Shown here in pieces: positions 2,729 to 17,510 of a stretch of 64,000 bases of DNA; the first letter of the stretch is position 1, and each line of letters begins with the position of its first letter. The position numbers and the translations under genes were made by a program. This stretch comes from Aplysia californica (taxonomy: Eukaryota), in the NCBI RefSeq assembly GCF_000002075.1, contig NW_004797455.1, positions 1,144,177 through 1,208,176 of the forward strand. The letters run 5' to 3'. The notes under the pieces were generated by a model, which was not told the origin of the DNA, did no database searches, and was given only the letters and a program-made list of their open reading frames with translations.

Positions 2729-5700
2729 ATGGACGCCCACTCTACTTTCGATATCATCTTCCTATTTGGTCCTTCATTACCGGTGGGTACCGTTATCTAA
2801 CGTTTTGTGATGAGAGCGGGCAGTATTGCTTTACTTTTGTAACATTAATTGTCATTTCGACTACCGTCATTTCTTTCTTTTGGGTTGTCAGTAGTCAAGC
2901 GGAGGTTGCTCTTACTTTACTGGGTTGCTGTAAGACTTGAGACTTGAGACGAATATAATGTAGCGTAGCGTAGCTTGTTGATGAATGTAACCGAATGTTA
3001 ATTAAGTATACCAATTCGCTTAGTTAACTTACTGGAAAGCTAAAAGGAGAAAGAAAAAATAGAAGGAAGGTAAAGGTATTTGGATATTATACTAAATTCT
3101 ATTAAATGGGCTCACAGTTTGAACCCCCCCCCAAAAAAAAAAAAAACTTCATGTAGATATCTAGCCTACATCTGACGATGTACTTGTTGTGTGTGTGTAT
3201 TCTGTAGCTATTTGTTAGTGTTACGACAGGATTACAGGGATTACATGTCATGCTGTGTGCAATGGCTACCCCCTCCCCCCTGAGTGTTCAATGTCTACCC
3301 CGCCCCCCCCCTCCGAACCCACAGAGAGCACAGATAAAAAGAAGCCTCAGTTTATTGAATTAAATGACTCAAATGACTGTCTGTGCTCTTTTTAACATTG
3401 TGTTCCCCTACTTTTCATATAGTTTGCAATAACAACACCAGGCTATCATTAAAAACATCATTAGGCCTATTAATAGCCTAGCGAATGACTTTAAAAGCAA
3501 TTATTTTAAAATAGATTGACTTGCTTTTACTTTTACTTTTAGGCGTTCTTGCTTCATCGCTTAAGGCTCAAGATTTTTATTGAATTAACACTTTTACATT
3601 TGATTGTATTTTCTTAGAATTATTTTTCTTTTAAATTCTGTTTTTGAATTGATTTGTTTCAGATGAAGGAGAGTTACCTTCCGAAATCTATCCTTTCTGC
3701 AGATTTTGTATCACTGTGTATTGAAGAAATGTTCCATCAAAATCCACAATTTGGGCTGAGAGATGCTGCTCTGAAAATTGTTCAAGAGTTGAAAAAGGTG
3801 AGGAAAGCTTGACAATTTTTAAAAAAGGGAATACTGTGAAAGTATCTTGAGGAAGTTATAGTTAGAGAAGTCCACATGGGCCGTTCACTAATAAGAACAA
3901 TGGGGAAGCGAAACATTTTATTATGCGGTTTCGAGGACACTTGATTGATGTAAAGGTTTGGCATCTGTTATCTCTGTAATTATAGAAGAAAGAAAACAAT
4001 AAGGCATGGGTAGACCCAGAGAGACTTTTTGGAAAAATCTGAACTGATGGGTGACGAGGAAACACCAGTATGATTTATGTTTTTTTTAGAGCATCTGAGC
4101 GGAAAAGTGAATGGAGAACCATTTCTGCAAATTTTTTGTTTCAGATCTGGTACCATATATTATGATGATAGTATGAAGGGGCTCATCAGACCGAATGTGA
4201 TTGGAGTTTGATCCACTGTTTGTCCTGGGTATGGTTGAAGGATGTTTCAGCTTGTTTTCGCCCAGGGGTTGTGGTACTGAGATAAGTCTTTTCAAATAAG
4301 ATCAAAGTACTTGACTGAGTTCCTGTGTACTACTCTTTGCATTTGAGAGTCCCAAAAGAACAATAACCCTGTTGTGAAAAGCTGCCAGGGAAAGACGTTA
4401 TAAATATATATTACTCCCCTCGGAAAAATAATCTGGGCAGTACAAATAATTTAGTTTACTATTGAATTTGGCTTGCAGGTTTTTTGTAGGTTAAGGGATG
4501 CTAATTTCTAGTTGTAAAATTAGATAACGTGAAGCAGTGCTAGCTCAAACAAGTGTGACTCAATAACTTTGAATACACAAATTTAACTGAACAGATTTTT
4601 GTCTCAATTTCTGTTCCATATTATGATATTCTTTGTACTTATTATGCATGAAACTTGAATCAAAATGGGAGTGACTCACAAAAGTTTTCTAGTTTACTTA
4701 GTGGTTCAACAAAGTGAACAAGATGCCAGTAAAAAATGGTCCTGAAGGGTTTAAGTTACAAATGTATCTACATAAGAAGGATACTTGTGGAAGTTTGTTG
4801 TGGTGTTGGCTGAAAGAATCTCTTTTGGGCTGCCCCTATGTTCATTTAAGGAAGCACAAAAGAAGANNNNNNNNNNNNNNNNNNNNNNNNNNNNNNNNNN
4901 NNNNNNNNNNNNNNNNNNNNNNNNNNNNNNNNNNNNNNNNNNNNNNNNNNNNNNNNNNNNNNNNNNNNNNNNNNNNNNNNNNNNNNNNNNNNNNNNNNNN
5001 NNNNNNNNNNNNNNNNNNNNNNNNNNNNTTTTAAAACATCTGAGAATGAATCTCTACATCATTGACACTGACCAGAAAAATGAAACTTCAGTTCAGATTT
5101 TTTATTCATTTCCTTTCTGTCTTTTCAAAGTATGGTACTCACAGATGACTTTTCATTTCCAGTTCCGAAAATGCTCAGGCCAAACCAGAACTGAAAACTG
5201 AATTGAAACCTGACTTTACACAACGTTCTATTTGTTGTTCAACCGTTCTTTTAACAGGTCATGTTATTCACCAAACATGTATCGCTTTGATTGTCCAGAT
5301 GAAGATGCTGCCTGGGATTTATAGGCGCATATGTATAAGAGATGAGTACACAAAAAAGATGAATTGTAAACCTTGGATATAAAAGGTGGCATTTCAGAAG
5401 TGGAAAGTTTTTATTTTGTTTTTTCCTCAGAATCGTCAAGTAATTGTTGATGGCAAACTTTTACTCAAAGCAACGAGAAAGAGCCTGGTTCAAACTATTA
5501 AGAAAAAGGTAAGAAAAAATTGGTAATGTCTTTTTTTTTCATTTATTATTGATGTTATGATATTGGTATGTTTTTGTTAGACCTAGCTTTGGAGTTGTTC
5601 CTTCTTTTTGACCCATTCAAAAGAGTATTTGTAAGCCCTGGTGTGTATAGGTCAGAGATTCTTTAACTTTCCAGATTTCTTCTCTTAACTCATGATCGAG

Positions 5701-15400: not shown

Positions 15401-17510
15401 TGGTTTCAACTTCAAGTAATGTTGAATTACAAAAGCACATTCTTTGCAACTCACAAGTCATATGAGTCATATGTTTTCTTTCTCTTCATACGGTAGTGGC
15501 AACTTTTTGAAAACTTGGCCCTCTTTATTTGCAGGTCTTCAAGAACAGTATATCTCATGACAGAAAAAGAGCTATGTAACATTGCCAGACAAGTTCTATC
15601 AGAGGTACTTCCCATGTTTGTCTGTTTACATTTGTTAATGTTCTGACTGTGATGACCATATGTAAGTCAGAGCAGTCAGTCTCTCTTACTGTAGCCTTGG
15701 AGCTAGGGCAAGGCAAGATCAGGATTTGGGCTTTTTGTGTGTTTGGCACAAGTATAGCAAATAGAAGTTTTTTTTCTTCAGTTTTGAAACTTCTGCTCCG
15801 CTTAGTCTCAAGGTAAGCAATTTCACAGGTAAGTCTAACTGCGAAATTTCAATTTCACAACAGCCGGGGCCAAAATATTCAGGTTGTGTAGTTTTGGTAT
15901 CAGAAGCTTTATGATTTATATATAAAATGAATACTGGTAACAAAAAAATAAACTGGAAAAGCCAAAAATTTCAGAGGGAGCGATAAATTATTGTATGTGT
16001 ATAATGCCCTTTTGACACTTTGCCCCCTATGGAACACCGATCAGAGACAATGTCGTCTTTCCCGCACAGGATGTCAGTCGAAAACAGTGTAACACAGCTA
16101 CAAAAACAATGGAGGAATGATCTCTCTTTAGACTTATGCACTTGTAACAGCTGGAACACTAACACTAACACCCTTCCTGAATGATTTTTGTGGCCCTTTG
16201 AGCACAGAAATCAGTAAGTTTGCAATGATTGGAGTGAAAATTTTTTAATATGTCAAGTACATTTAGTGCGAGTGCTGCTTTATAGTGTCGCTATGATAGG
16301 CGTTCGAGTGATGAATGTGTGCAAATGGCTTTAGATCCAATTCCTACTCCTATTCGGATGAGCATATATGTGGTCGTCATGTTCAATTTTCTGAAAATTT
16401 CATAATGAAATAAGCATTTTTGCTGAGATATGGGACAAGCAATCATGTCCCCCCAATTCCCTTATATTACTTATAATTCTGCTTCCTGGTACCGGCTTCT
16501 GTGGTGTAGTGGTTAGGCACTTAACAGTCACATGCAGGAGACCTGAGTTTGATTCCCGAGGGGAGGGAACTTTTATTGGGTGTCTCAGTCTTTCTGCTGG
16601 TATGTTGTATCCATCTTCGCCCAGGTTTGCCCTGACAAGCATGATTGAAGACCGTCTCCTGAATGTTCTGAACTGTGTTGATGGGGGCATAAAAATACCT
16701 GCATTTAAACAAATTTTGTTTTGGCTTCCAGGTACGTGGGGCGAAAAAGGTTTTGAACTCTGCCCTGAGTGGGGAAAGAGTGTAAATTATTTAAATTATA
16801 CACTGTAAGATTATTTTAGAACAGGGACATACCATATTTAGTCAATAGTGTATTTGGACCAAATTAAATGATGGGTAATCAGGAAAACTTGTACTGCTCT
16901 GTACAAAAATAGCTTCTGTCGTTATAAAGCCAAAGTTCATGTCATAAGAAATACATGAATACTGTGATTATCATTATGTATCACGACGCAGTGGAATCAG
17001 TGGACATTTTATAGCTTGTTCATTTGTCTTGCTTTTGGTGAAAAAACCCCCCGAATCTATAGAGAACAGAAGTCAAGATATTTGCGATTGAAGGAGGCCT
17101 GGTTTCAGAGGTAAATTAGCGAGAAAATGGCCACCAAAGTTTGGCAACTTTCAAAGCAAATTTACATTTGTGGGCCTTAAATCAACATTTTTCACTAAAG
17201 TCCACAAAGACGTGTTTTAAAATGGACAAAAATTCGATAAAAATTGGCAAACGGACAGAAAACGCCAGTTTCTTCGATTTCATTAATTTGACGAGTGCCT
17301 GGTTTCACCACGATGCCTCACATAGACTATCATAATAATAGTAATAAATTTCACTCCATTCTTTTTTTTTTTGGTATTGAGCCCAAGTAAATTTGCATAT
17401 GTATGATCTGTTCTTGCTAATATGCCTCTCAGTATAGTTTTCTCCTTTTTTTTCAGGCAGGGAGAGAGGACAGCATGGAAAAAAAGATTGAAGATAAAGA
17501 TGCTGGTTGA
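2729..17510 (+). CDS. Spliced gene (~525 aa): PNK-like P-loop pseudokinase + HAD-like pseudophosphatase + CYREN/MRI-like C-terminal module
   Basis: Exons with GT-AG boundaries and matching phases: 2729-2782, 3663-3797, 5431-5508, 6240-6417, 7111-7187, 7635-7788, 8654-8718, 10166-10288, 11184-11255, 11703-11732 (donor uncertain), 12666-12880, 14263-14535, 15535-15604, 17457-17510 (TGA). Joined protein: MDAHSTFDIIFLFGPSLPMKES...NRQVIVDG...TRKSL...EDPKPDEGF...GLLIQWEALL...LPPQPG...VYVFNDLDHMKMAQVAGV...IPSWM...RTVYLMTEKELCNIARQVL...DKDAG*. AATAAA at about 17616 and 17673. Confidence 0.8.
4866..5028. other. Assembly gap (N)
   Basis: Run of N. Confidence 1.
7635..11255 (+). CDS. Exons 6-9 of gene 1: HAD-IIIA/PNK3P-like domain with degenerate motifs
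   Basis: GLLIQWEALL at the motif I position, SLPPQPGVLAFLQSQHLLDL matching the RKPxPG...LD pattern, and TVYVFNDLDHMKMAQVAGV matching the hhVGD...D...AxxAG pattern. Confidence 0.7.
10775..10972 (+). repeat. 48-bp minisatellite, about 4 copies
   Basis: Unit CATTCATACTGCCTATTATTGTCTTTGTGGTGACGGTAGAAGGACTTG. Confidence 0.95.
13548..14180 (+). mobile_element. tRNA-headed SINE-like repeat family A
   Basis: TGGTCTAGAG ... GATTCGAAACC (A/B box-like). Homologous copies at about 23770-24150 (minus) and 43180-43460. Confidence 0.6.
14426..15604 (+). CDS. CYREN/MRI-like module: KBM-like IPSWM (exon 12) and MRI core motif (exon 13)
   Basis: IPSWM-x34-RTVYLMTEKELCNIARQVL resembles human CYREN LPSWL-x~33-RTVYCMNEAEIVDVALGIL (recalled from memory). 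Confidence 0.7.
16493..16712 (+). mobile_element. tRNA(Asp-like)-derived SINE family B
   Basis: GTGTAGTGGTTAGGCAC...GTCACATGCAGGAGACCTGAGTTTGATTCCC head. Homologous copies at about 30598-30812 and 61070-61290. Confidence 0.7.

What the first reader, a model, noticed from the sequence alone, without database searches (positions are those of the whole stretch)
2729..17510. Candidate NHEJ scaffold: doubly degenerate polynucleotide kinase/phosphatase fused to a CYREN/MRI-like Ku-binding module
Seen: 14 exons splice in frame into one ORF of about 525 aa that the ORF track does not show. It reads P-loop-kinase-like domain, then HAD-like domain, then a linker, then IPSWM...RTVYLMTEKELCNIARQVL. Established: PNKP heals DNA ends in NHEJ and single-strand break repair, and vertebrate CYREN/MRI is a small, largely disordered Ku-binding adaptor with no enzyme domains. 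Inference: this is an architecture I do not recognise, in which a catalytically dead end-healing enzyme may bind or shield DNA ends and be recruited to Ku. That would hint at an ancestral or lineage-specific form of CYREN. The intact frame over 14 exons argues against a pseudogene.
Basis: partly seen in the sequence, partly recalled or inferred. Interest (0 to 1): 0.92.

Follow-up and report, generated by a model that had tools for sequence, protein, structure and literature searches.

The report
CYREN-like tail on dead PNK-like enzyme
This sea-hare gene really does join a catalytically dead DNA-end kinase/phosphatase-like body to a tail like the small vertebrate repair adaptor CYREN/MRI, and the same fusion in other molluscs, echinoderms and amphioxus suggests that CYREN began as the tail of a larger protein.

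Summary
Confirmed. The 14 exons (2729-17510, + strand) have AG/GT borders. Checked exon by exon, they give the 525-aa RefSeq product of Aplysia californica LOC101861583 isoform X1, named "uncharacterized". The assembly gap lies in intron 2, and homologues show no residues missing there.

An RNA-derived contig joins exon 11 to 12 to 13, so the body-to-tail join is spliced. Both exons are single copy in the genome.

Collinear homologues with the same body plus tail occur in Littorina, Nucella, Sinanodonta, two echinoderms and three amphioxus species. A confident model of the sea-star member matches the mouse PNKP kinase domain (Z 14.6) followed by a HAD-IIIA phosphatase fold (GmhB, Z 12.7), in the T4 Pnk order.
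- The phosphatase motif DxD reads QWE in every member.
- The Walker A motif is intact outside gastropods and lost in Aplysia and Littorina.

The tails carry an RxxPxW[ML] Ku-binding motif, a YCM-type multimerisation segment about 39 residues later, and usually a C-terminal LDDIF end, as in human MRI.

Aplysia is the most eroded member: its Ku motif lacks the Arg and it has no C-terminal motif. Pfam MRI does not match any member, so homology to CYREN is likely (about 0.8) but unproven. Ku binding is untested. Earlier scan notes cover this same stretch, not other DNA.

The parts
2729..2782 (+). Exon 1: start codon, first strand and first half of the degenerate P-loop (GPSLP, 2768-2782)
   Evidence: Residues 1-18 of P0013. 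Aligns with the strand and G-P-P stretch of homologues. No reads laid here.
3663..3797 (+). Exon 2: rest of the P-loop remnant (MKES, 3663-3674) and helix 1. Isoform X2 starts at an internal Met here.
   Evidence: Residues 19-63 of P0013. P0001 starts at MFHQNPQ.
4867..5028 (.). Assembly gap, inside intron 2
   Evidence: No residues are missing at the exon 2/3 junction in the family alignment. Not filled.
5431..5508 (+). Exon 3: Walker-B-like strand (QVIVDG; relatives read VVIDDEN)
6240..6417 (+). Exon 4: kinase-like core strand and lid region
7111..7187 (+). Exon 5: end of the kinase-like domain and the linker
7635..7788 (+). Exon 6: first strand of the HAD-like domain, with QWE (7659-7667) where the catalytic DxD should be
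   Evidence: Model residues 181-340 match GmhB residues 4-186.
8654..8718 (+). Exon 7: HAD-like domain helix
10166..10288 (+). Exon 8: PPQPG (10226-10240), where HAD-IIIA enzymes have RKPxPG (motif III Lys lost)
11184..11255 (+). Exon 9: motif-IV-like TVYVFNDLDH...AGV, lacking the usual acidic pair
   Evidence: RNA contigs X18 and X19
11703..11732 (+). Exon 10: 30-nt micro-exon
   Evidence: Joints 11255 to 11703 and 11732 to 12666 in X18 and X19 contigs
12666..12880 (+). Exon 11: end of the HAD-like domain and most of a small conserved third module. Its donor GTAAGA overlaps an in-frame TAA at 12882-12884.
   Evidence: Joint 12880 to 14263, GT..AG, 216 letters on the shorter side, X19. X18 reads through to 13195. 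Single copy.
14263..14535 (+). Exon 12: last helix of the third module, disordered linker, and A-KBM-like NIPSWM (14426-14440)
15535..15604 (+). Exon 13: MuD-like segment (RTVYLMTEKELCNIARQVL, 15542-15598)
   Evidence: Joint 14535 to 15535 in X18 and X19 contigs and two X21 reads
17457..17510 (+). Exon 14: acidic C-terminus and stop codon, with no XLF-like motif
   Evidence: No LDDIF-type exon found downstream.

Best explanation
The locus is one expressed gene, Aplysia californica LOC101861583. It belongs to an unnamed family present in at least molluscs, echinoderms and cephalochordates.

Each member has four parts:
1. A PNKP-type P-loop kinase domain.
2. A HAD-IIIA phosphatase-like domain that has lost its catalytic residues in every member.
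3. A small conserved third module.
4. [quoted passage not shown]

Shown: the exon structure, the splicing of body to tail, the two folds in an orthologue, the motif states, and the conservation of the fusion.

Inferred:
- The tail tethers the protein, probably as a multimer, to Ku at DNA double-strand breaks.
- The folded body contributes DNA-end or phosphate-ligand binding rather than catalysis.
- In gastropods the kinase has also lost its Walker A, so the Aplysia protein is a pure pseudoenzyme scaffold.
- Aplysia's weakened Ku motif and missing C-terminal motif suggest reduced or altered Ku dependence.
- Vertebrate CYREN is most simply the surviving tail of this ancestral long protein.
For: - **Gene model.** The exon-by-exon match to P0013 is exact.
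- **Splicing.** Spliced joints 11 to 12 to 13 are seen, and there is no second genomic copy.
- **Homologues.** Collinear homologues run from the kinase domain through the tail: Littorina, sea star (E 4e-47), amphioxus (E 1e-43), plus Nucella, Sinanodonta and Amphiura. The exon 11/12 junction falls inside a conserved, confidently modelled helix.
- **Folds.** The top Foldseek hits are PNKP, Pnkp1 and T4 Pnk (E 1e-6 to 1e-5), then GmhB. VIA gives Z 14.6 to the PNKP kinase domain and Z 12.7 to GmhB. PNKP is the top PDB sequence hit of the family profile (E 0.023). AAA_33 scores E 8e-5 on the amphioxus member.
- **Motif states.**
- **Tail.** The core RxxPxW and the MRI-X end ...REIFFS come from PMC4831024. 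M17 as the commonest residue, MuD 49-81 and 54-YCMN-57 come from the 2026 preprint. Family spacing is 38-40 residues in most members. The amphioxus tail's nearest named Atlas cluster is CYREN/PF15325.
Against: - Pfam MRI (PF15325) matches no exon and no family member, even at E up to 10. The genome scan gave only a chance hit on acidic low-complexity sequence.
- The Atlas hit scores only 0.81, which is no more than a lead. Aplysia's own tail gave nothing.
- Aplysia's Ku motif lacks the core Arg and sits after acidic residues. No C-terminal motif exists in the model or downstream.
- Ku-binding motifs are short and can arise by convergence.
- Aplysia's own fold was not obtained (pLDDT 35, on a two-sequence alignment).
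- No Pfam kinase or HAD family matches the Aplysia protein.
- The body-to-tail join rests on one contig from a run of unrecorded library type.
- No binding or activity data exist.
Confidence: 0.68

Rival explanations
1. The tail is a Ku-binding or otherwise adaptor-like disordered region that acquired CYREN-like short motifs by convergence. The family would then not be related to vertebrate CYREN.
For: There is no Pfam MRI match for any member. The Atlas score is only 0.81 and nothing came up for Aplysia. A-KBM and XLF-like motifs occur in unrelated proteins such as APLF, WRN, XLF and PAXX, and the minimal motif is found in more than 600 human proteins.
Against: Three separate features recur in the same order. 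The spacing is 38-40 residues against about 39 in human. The last motif sits at the very C-terminus. The MuD-like segment is about 16-20 residues long, reads YCMN in Amphiura and YCMS in amphioxus, and keeps hydrophobic residues at the positions mutated in the 4A4D mutant. The family was found through its N-terminal domains, not by searching for these motifs.
Confidence: 0.18
2. The protein works outside NHEJ, for example in RNA-end metabolism or another pathway. In Aplysia the Ku motif would then be a non-functional relic.
For: Aplysia lacks the Arg and basic patch of the Ku motif and lacks the XLF-like end. PNK-fold kinases also act on RNA: fungal RNA kinase and Pnkp1 are among the structural matches. 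MRI and Ku have been linked to splicing.
Against: The Pro, Trp and Met of the Ku motif and the whole MuD are retained in Aplysia after long divergence. The closest kinase domain by both sequence and structure is the DNA-repair enzyme PNKP.
Confidence: 0.2
3. Exons 12-14 belong to a separate downstream gene, and the fused form is a read-through or annotation artefact.
For: An in-frame TAA sits directly at the exon 11 donor, and an X18 contig reads through it to 13195. Polyadenylation-like hexamers lie in intron 11.
Against: The GT..AG joint appears in an RNA contig with 216 letters on the shorter side. Exon 12 has no start codon ahead of the Ku motif. The junction lies inside a conserved helix. 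The same fusion occurs in nine homologues from three phyla.
Confidence: 0.02
4. The Aplysia copy is a decaying gene on its way to becoming a pseudogene.
For: It is the most eroded member: P-loop lost, Ku-motif Arg lost, C-terminal motif absent.
Against: The frame is intact over 14 exons with canonical splice sites. The gene is expressed and spliced. The invariant family residues (QWE, PxPG, Y..H..A..G, MuD) are retained. The P-loop was already lost in Littorina, so that loss is old and the gene has been kept since.
Confidence: 0.04

Closest known systems
Vertebrate CYREN/MRI (C7orf49)
   Same: The order of features is the same: an APLF-like Ku80-binding motif with Pro-x-Trp-Met, a spacer of about 39 residues, and a MuD-like strand plus helix (Y-[CL]-M...E-L...A...L). 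In most relatives a C-terminal ...LDDIF(S) end resembles MRI-X ...REIFFS. Apart from the MuD helix, the tail is predicted to be disordered.
   Different: CYREN is a protein of 157/69/102 aa with no folded enzyme-like domain. Here the module is the tail of a folded body of about 400 aa. Pfam MRI does not match. Aplysia lacks the core Arg of RxxPxW and the XLF-like end.
Mammalian PNKP (polynucleotide kinase 3'-phosphatase)
   Same: PNKP's kinase domain is the closest known fold and sequence: Z 14.6, 22% identity, and the profile's top PDB hits, sharing LRxGKxVVID. The second domain has a HAD-IIIA-type phosphatase fold, and PNKP likewise plays a DNA-end repair role.
   Different: The domain order is reversed, kinase then phosphatase. 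There is no FHA domain, and recruitment would go through Ku rather than phospho-XRCC4/XRCC1. The phosphatase catalytic residues are replaced in all members, and Walker A is lost in gastropods. Canonical PNK3P-domain genes exist elsewhere in the Aplysia genome.
Phage T4 Pnk and bacterial Pnkp1
   Same: The domain order is the same, an N-terminal P-loop kinase followed by a HAD phosphatase. About 345 alignment columns cover both domains.
   Different: Identity is only 12-14%. Both are active enzymes of RNA repair, with no disordered Ku-binding tail and no third module.
APLF
   Same: Both combine a Ku80-vWA-binding A-KBM in a disordered region with a DNA-damage module. The Trp-Met version of the motif is shared.
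   Different: APLF has FHA and PBZ domains. It has no kinase or HAD fold, no MuD and no C-terminal XLF-like motif.
HAD-IIIA phosphatases GmhB and HisB-N
   Same: These are the best structural matches of the second domain: Z 12.7 and 11.6, about 150 residues aligned at 2.6-3.3 A. The PxPG stretch sits where they have RKPxPG (recalled from the known GmhB sequence, not tested here).
   Different: They are active single-domain bacterial enzymes with DxD. The family has QWE and lacks the motif III Lys and the motif IV acidic pair.

Membership tests
CYREN/MRI (Pfam PF15325) | Match to the Pfam MRI profile | tested here: not met
   No match for single exons, P0001, P0013 or any homologue, at E up to 1-10. 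The six-frame genome scan gave only an E 2.3 hit on acidic low-complexity sequence elsewhere.
CYREN/MRI | N-terminal APLF-like Ku-binding motif, core R-x-x-P-x-W (PMC4831024) | tested here: not met
   Aplysia reads DPNIPSWM. Pro, Trp and Met are present, but the Arg is replaced by Pro and the preceding residues are acidic. Eight relatives have the full RxxPxW[ML].
CYREN/MRI | Conserved multimerisation domain (human residues 49-81; 54-YCMN-57 strand plus helix) | tested here: met
   Aplysia has TVYLMTEKELCNIARQVL 40 residues after the Ku motif. Amphiura reads YCMN and amphioxus YCMS. A helix is predicted at residues 521-538 of the sea-star model.
CYREN/MRI | C-terminal XLF-like motif | tested here: not met
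   Aplysia ends ...KIEDKDAG, and no such exon lies downstream. The motif is present at the C-terminus of Littorina, Sinanodonta, Patiria and Amphiura, and repeated internally in amphioxus.
CYREN/MRI | Binds the Ku70/80 heterodimer | not testable with these tools
P-loop polynucleotide kinases (PNKP kinase domain, Pfam AAA_33) | Walker A GxxxxGK[ST] | tested here: not met
   Aplysia reads GPSLPMKES and Littorina GPPSPAVPS. The motif is intact in Sinanodonta, Patiria, Amphiura, B. lanceolatum and P0012.
P-loop polynucleotide kinases (PNKP kinase domain, Pfam AAA_33) | Kinase fold and profile match | tested here: inconclusive
   The fold is met for the sea-star orthologue (Z 14.6 to 1yj5). AAA_33 stays below the gathering score (23.4 against 27 bits) and does not hit Aplysia. 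Aplysia's own model failed, so its fold is inferred from collinear homology.
HAD phosphatases, subfamily IIIA (Pfam PNK3P PF08645) | Motif I DxD nucleophile | tested here: not met
   QWE occupies this position in all ten sequences. In the model, strand 184-188 ends at the Gln.
HAD phosphatases, subfamily IIIA (Pfam PNK3P PF08645) | HAD Rossmann-like fold and profile match | tested here: inconclusive
   The fold is met for the orthologue (GmhB Z 12.7, HisB-N 11.6). PF08645 hits other Aplysia loci but not this gene.

The most novel reading that the evidence does not exclude
Vertebrate CYREN/MRI, now treated as a stand-alone disordered microprotein, is the leftover tail of an ancient bilaterian protein. 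That protein tethered a PNKP-like kinase and a dead phosphatase-like reader domain to Ku. In bivalves, echinoderms and amphioxus the long form keeps an intact P-loop and may be a second DNA-end kinase, recruited by Ku and independent of an FHA domain. Gastropods turned it into a pure pseudoenzyme scaffold, and vertebrates discarded the body altogether.
Probability: 0.5. Interest if true: 0.88.

Novelty: new variant of a known kind. Interest (0 to 1): 0.78.

Why it matters
CYREN/MRI is described in current literature as a small, largely disordered adaptor. Its mode of action, and why it either promotes or inhibits end joining, are still debated. Grundy et al. describe its motifs as conserved among vertebrates.

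A conserved long form outside vertebrates gives CYREN an evolutionary origin. It also ties CYREN physically to a DNA-end-healing fold. The folded body has strictly conserved but non-catalytic pocket residues (QWE, PxPG, Y..H). This suggests that the ancestral job included recognising a DNA end or a phosphate ligand at Ku-bound breaks.

The family also supplies natural experiments:
- members with an intact P-loop and members with a lost one;
- members with and without the C-terminal motif;
- a possible tail-less isoform in Aplysia.

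Tried and rejected
- **Pfam on ten single exon frames:** nothing useful.
- **First splice-site script:** too strict and found few exons. Exons were then worked out by eye and confirmed with database proteins.
- **Pfam MRI genome scan:** only a chance hit.
- **Exon 12 against PDB sequences:** chance-level hits only.
- **Atlas search with Aplysia's tail:** no usable hit.
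- **Search for a downstream LDDIF-type exon:** none found.
- **Second structure job:** I sent the two-sequence alignment A1 by mistake instead of a deep one. The model has pLDDT 35 and is unusable, so it counts neither for nor against.
- **Complex prediction (MuD self-association):** unavailable, nothing folded.
- **Four literature searches and three papers read:** no description of a long CYREN or of this family. The library holds open-access papers and bioRxiv only.
- **P0003 from the representative search:** a repeat-rich unrelated protein, set aside.
- **Joined step:** I sent no hand-joined spliced product to any tool. The exons were searched by reference, and the RefSeq products returned by the searches (P0001, P0013) were used instead.

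Full report
**1. The observation**

I rebuilt the gene by hand from open frames and splice signals. I then checked it against database proteins.

A phmmer search with exon 6 alone (window:7635-7787) returned a 485-aa protein that is 100% identical over that exon (P0001). Its source names it [quoted passage not shown]. Its 90% cluster also holds isoform X1, P0013, XP_005098589.1, of 525 aa.

An exon-by-exon check shows that the 14 exons all have AG/GT borders and fit in phase. They total 1578 nt. Each exon's peptide lies in order in P0013, with 0 or 1 split-codon residue between neighbours.

I did not send a hand-joined product to any tool.

**2. The assembly gap**

The gap at 4867-5028 lies inside intron 2 (3798-5430). 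Exons 2 and 3 are both phase 0. In alignments with nine homologues there is no insertion at that junction. An exon hidden in the gap is therefore unlikely, though I laid no reads there. The gap was not filled.

**3. Is the body really spliced to the tail?**

- Contigs of runs X18 and X19 join 11184-11255 to a 30-nt micro-exon at 11703-11732 and on to 12666.
- One X19 contig (714 nt, depth 9.8) joins 12880 to 14263 (GT..AG, 216 letters on the shorter side) and 14535 to 15535.
- Two raw polyA RNA reads of X21 also span 14535 to 15535.

Exons 11 and 12 each occur once in the 927-Mb genome, so the joined form is spliced RNA and not a retrocopy. The library types of X18 and X19 are not on record, which weakens this somewhat.

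Independent support comes from three observations:
- Exon 12 has no start codon before its Ku-like motif.
- The exon 11/12 junction falls inside a conserved, confidently modelled helix.
- The same fusion is present in other phyla (section 4).

One caveat concerns the exon 11 donor GTAAGA, which overlaps an in-frame TAA at 12882-12884. An X18 contig reads through it to 13195. A tail-less isoform ending after residue 394 is therefore possible, but this could equally be pre-mRNA.

**4. The family**

Two region-restricted searches with the N-terminal 335-345 residues of homologues found:
- Littorina saxatilis (652 aa)
- Nucella lapillus (600 aa)
- Sinanodonta woodiana (712 aa)
- Patiria miniata (690 aa)
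- Amphiura filiformis (805 aa)
- three Branchiostoma species (505-889 aa)
- one transcript contig of an unidentified animal (P0012)

All that carry a name are called uncharacterized or hypothetical.

Aplysia aligns in one collinear segment from the kinase-like domain to the end of the tail. Against the sea star, E is 4e-47 over residues 2-481 of isoform X2. Against amphioxus, E is 1e-43. No vertebrate protein appeared in these searches. They see only proteins of about 360-1400 aa that share exact 5-residue words with the query, so this is not proof of absence.

**5. The folded body**

With the ten-sequence alignment, AlphaFold2 models the sea-star protein confidently over residues 1-420 (pLDDT mostly 70-94). 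The tail is disordered except for one helix at 521-538.

Foldseek against the PDB puts mammalian PNKP first (E 1e-6). Next come bacterial Pnkp1 and T4 Pnk, with about 345 columns spanning both domains, and then the HAD-IIIA phosphatase GmhB.

VIA-align gives, for each domain:

| Model residues | Best match | Z | rmsd | Aligned | Identity |
|---|---|---|---|---|---|
| 9-171 | mouse PNKP kinase domain (1yj5, 362-503) | 14.6 | 2.7 A | 140 | 22% |
| 181-340 | GmhB (3l8e) | 12.7 | 2.6 A | 152 | 14% |
| 182-340 | HisB-N (2fps) | 11.6 | 3.3 A | 148 | 9% |

By sequence, the family profile's five best PDB hits are all PNKP kinase domains (E 0.023, sharing LRxGKxVVID). Pfam AAA_33 scores E 8e-5 on the amphioxus member, below the gathering score. 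So the order is kinase then phosphatase, as in T4 Pnk and opposite to PNKP.

Canonical PNK3P-domain genes lie elsewhere in the Aplysia genome, and PF08645 does not hit this gene. It is therefore a separate, divergent family and not the PNKP orthologue.

A third small module (sea-star residues about 350-420, pLDDT near 90) is conserved but was not tested on its own.

**6. Catalytic motifs**

- **Walker A** is intact in the bivalve, both echinoderms, B. lanceolatum and P0012 (for example GPPFAGKT), together with VVIDDEN. It is lost in Littorina (GPPSPAVPS) and Aplysia (GPSLPMKES, with VIVDG).
- **HAD motif I** reads QWE in all ten sequences. The Gln ends the first strand of the domain in the model.
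- **PPxPG** stands where HAD-IIIA enzymes have RKPxPG. That comparison is from my recollection of GmhB and was not tested here.
- **The motif IV region** keeps Y...H...A..AG but not the acidic pair.

So the phosphatase is dead across the whole family, and the kinase is additionally dead in gastropods. "Doubly degenerate" is correct for Aplysia.

The invariant residues cluster in the pseudo-phosphatase pocket. This argues for a conserved binding role (inference).

**7. The tail**

Published features of human MRI:
- A-KBM SETKTRVLPSWLTA with core RxxPxW, and MRI-X ...VLKYVREIFFS at the C-terminus (PMC4831024).
- Met rather than Leu at position 17 in most species.
- A multimerisation domain at 49-81 with strand 54-YCMN-57 and helix residues V64, L66, I68 and L69.

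Features of the family tails:
- RxxPxW[ML] in eight relatives.
- A segment 38-40 residues on in most members (30-46 overall) reading T-x-Y-[CILV]-[ML]-x-x-x-E-L...A...[IV]L. It reads YCMN in Amphiura and YCMS in amphioxus.
- A C-terminal ...LD[DE]IF(S) in Littorina, Sinanodonta, Patiria and Amphiura, with internal repeats in amphioxus.

The amphioxus tail's nearest named cluster in the ESM Atlas is "Cell cycle regulator of non-homologous end joining" (PF15325), at the weak score of 0.81.

Evidence against homology:
- Pfam MRI matches nothing.
- Aplysia's own tail gave no Atlas hit.

Aplysia is the most eroded member. It keeps Pro-Ser-Trp-Met and a well-conserved MuD. It lacks the core Arg, has acidic residues before the motif, and has no C-terminal motif in the model or downstream in the window.

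**8. Reading**

Shown:
- one spliced gene;
- a conserved fusion across at least Mollusca, Echinodermata and Cephalochordata;
- the PNKP-type kinase fold plus HAD-IIIA fold in an orthologue;
- the motif states.

Inferred:
- Tethering to Ku through the tail, with multimerisation.
- The body acts as a non-catalytic binder of a DNA end or phosphate ligand.
- Vertebrate CYREN descends from this tail. I put homology at about 0.8, and Ku binding by the Aplysia protein itself at about 0.5.

I found no description of such a long form in the searchable literature, where CYREN is treated as a disordered microprotein.

**9. What failed or was unavailable**

- The second structure job used a two-sequence alignment by my mistake and is unusable.

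**10. Verdict**

The fusion is ancestral rather than specific to this lineage. Membership of Pfam MRI, AAA_33 and PNK3P as defined is not met for the Aplysia protein. It is best described as a member of a new, unnamed family that combines known modules.

Noticed in passing
window 12881-13195 (and 13228-14000): The exon 11 donor GTAAGA overlaps an in-frame TAA (12882-12884), so an unspliced transcript would stop right after residue 394. An X18 contig runs from 12665 through the donor to 13195. ATTAAA/AATAAA hexamers lie at 13110, 13369, 13380 and 14198. This could be a tail-less isoform or just pre-mRNA.
   Followed up: partly
L004:408-2168: This is a transcript contig of an unidentified animal (Logan, SRR15421486). 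The N-terminal module ORF (P0012) is followed in the same frame by a TGA. After it come a SWIM zinc finger (PF04434, E 4e-5, above cut-off) and an RSLPSWM Ku-binding motif at the contig end. It may be a lineage variant with an inserted SWIM domain, or a retained intron.
   Followed up: partly
P0010 (Amphiura filiformis), residues about 425-500 and 575-650: The gene model repeats a block of about 150 aa that includes the Ku-binding motif (NRAIPSWLV appears twice). It is either a real tandem exon duplication or an assembly or annotation artefact.
   Followed up: no
P0006 and P0007 (Branchiostoma), C-terminal 200 residues: Amphioxus tails carry three or four repeats of an XLF-like FLDSI/LDDIF motif, instead of a single C-terminal copy.
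   Followed up: no
G000 contigs C126:75127-76362, C18:987247-997759, C1468:23625-24101: Canonical PNK3P (PF08645) phosphatase-domain exons lie elsewhere in the genome, presumably from the true PNKP and related genes. The C18 hits contain stop codons.
   Followed up: no
window 16900-17099: A repeat with very high RNA and contig depth on both strands and many variant letters. It is probably a transcribed interspersed repeat inside intron 13.
   Followed up: no
window 10750-10990 and 2464-2545: A tandem repeat of about 39 nt in intron 8 shows up as repeated peptide units in all + frames. A long CAG-type microsatellite lies just upstream of exon 1.
   Followed up: no
window 32114-32848 (-) and 61708-62184 (+): Both are retroelement fragments: an RNase H-like ORF of 244 aa and a reverse-transcriptase-like ORF of 158 aa.
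   Followed up: no
window 14700-15099 (-): A few polyA RNA reads lie on the minus strand inside intron 12, all with T>C and G>A at 14907/14908. This may be an antisense transcript or a repeat copy from elsewhere.
   Followed up: no
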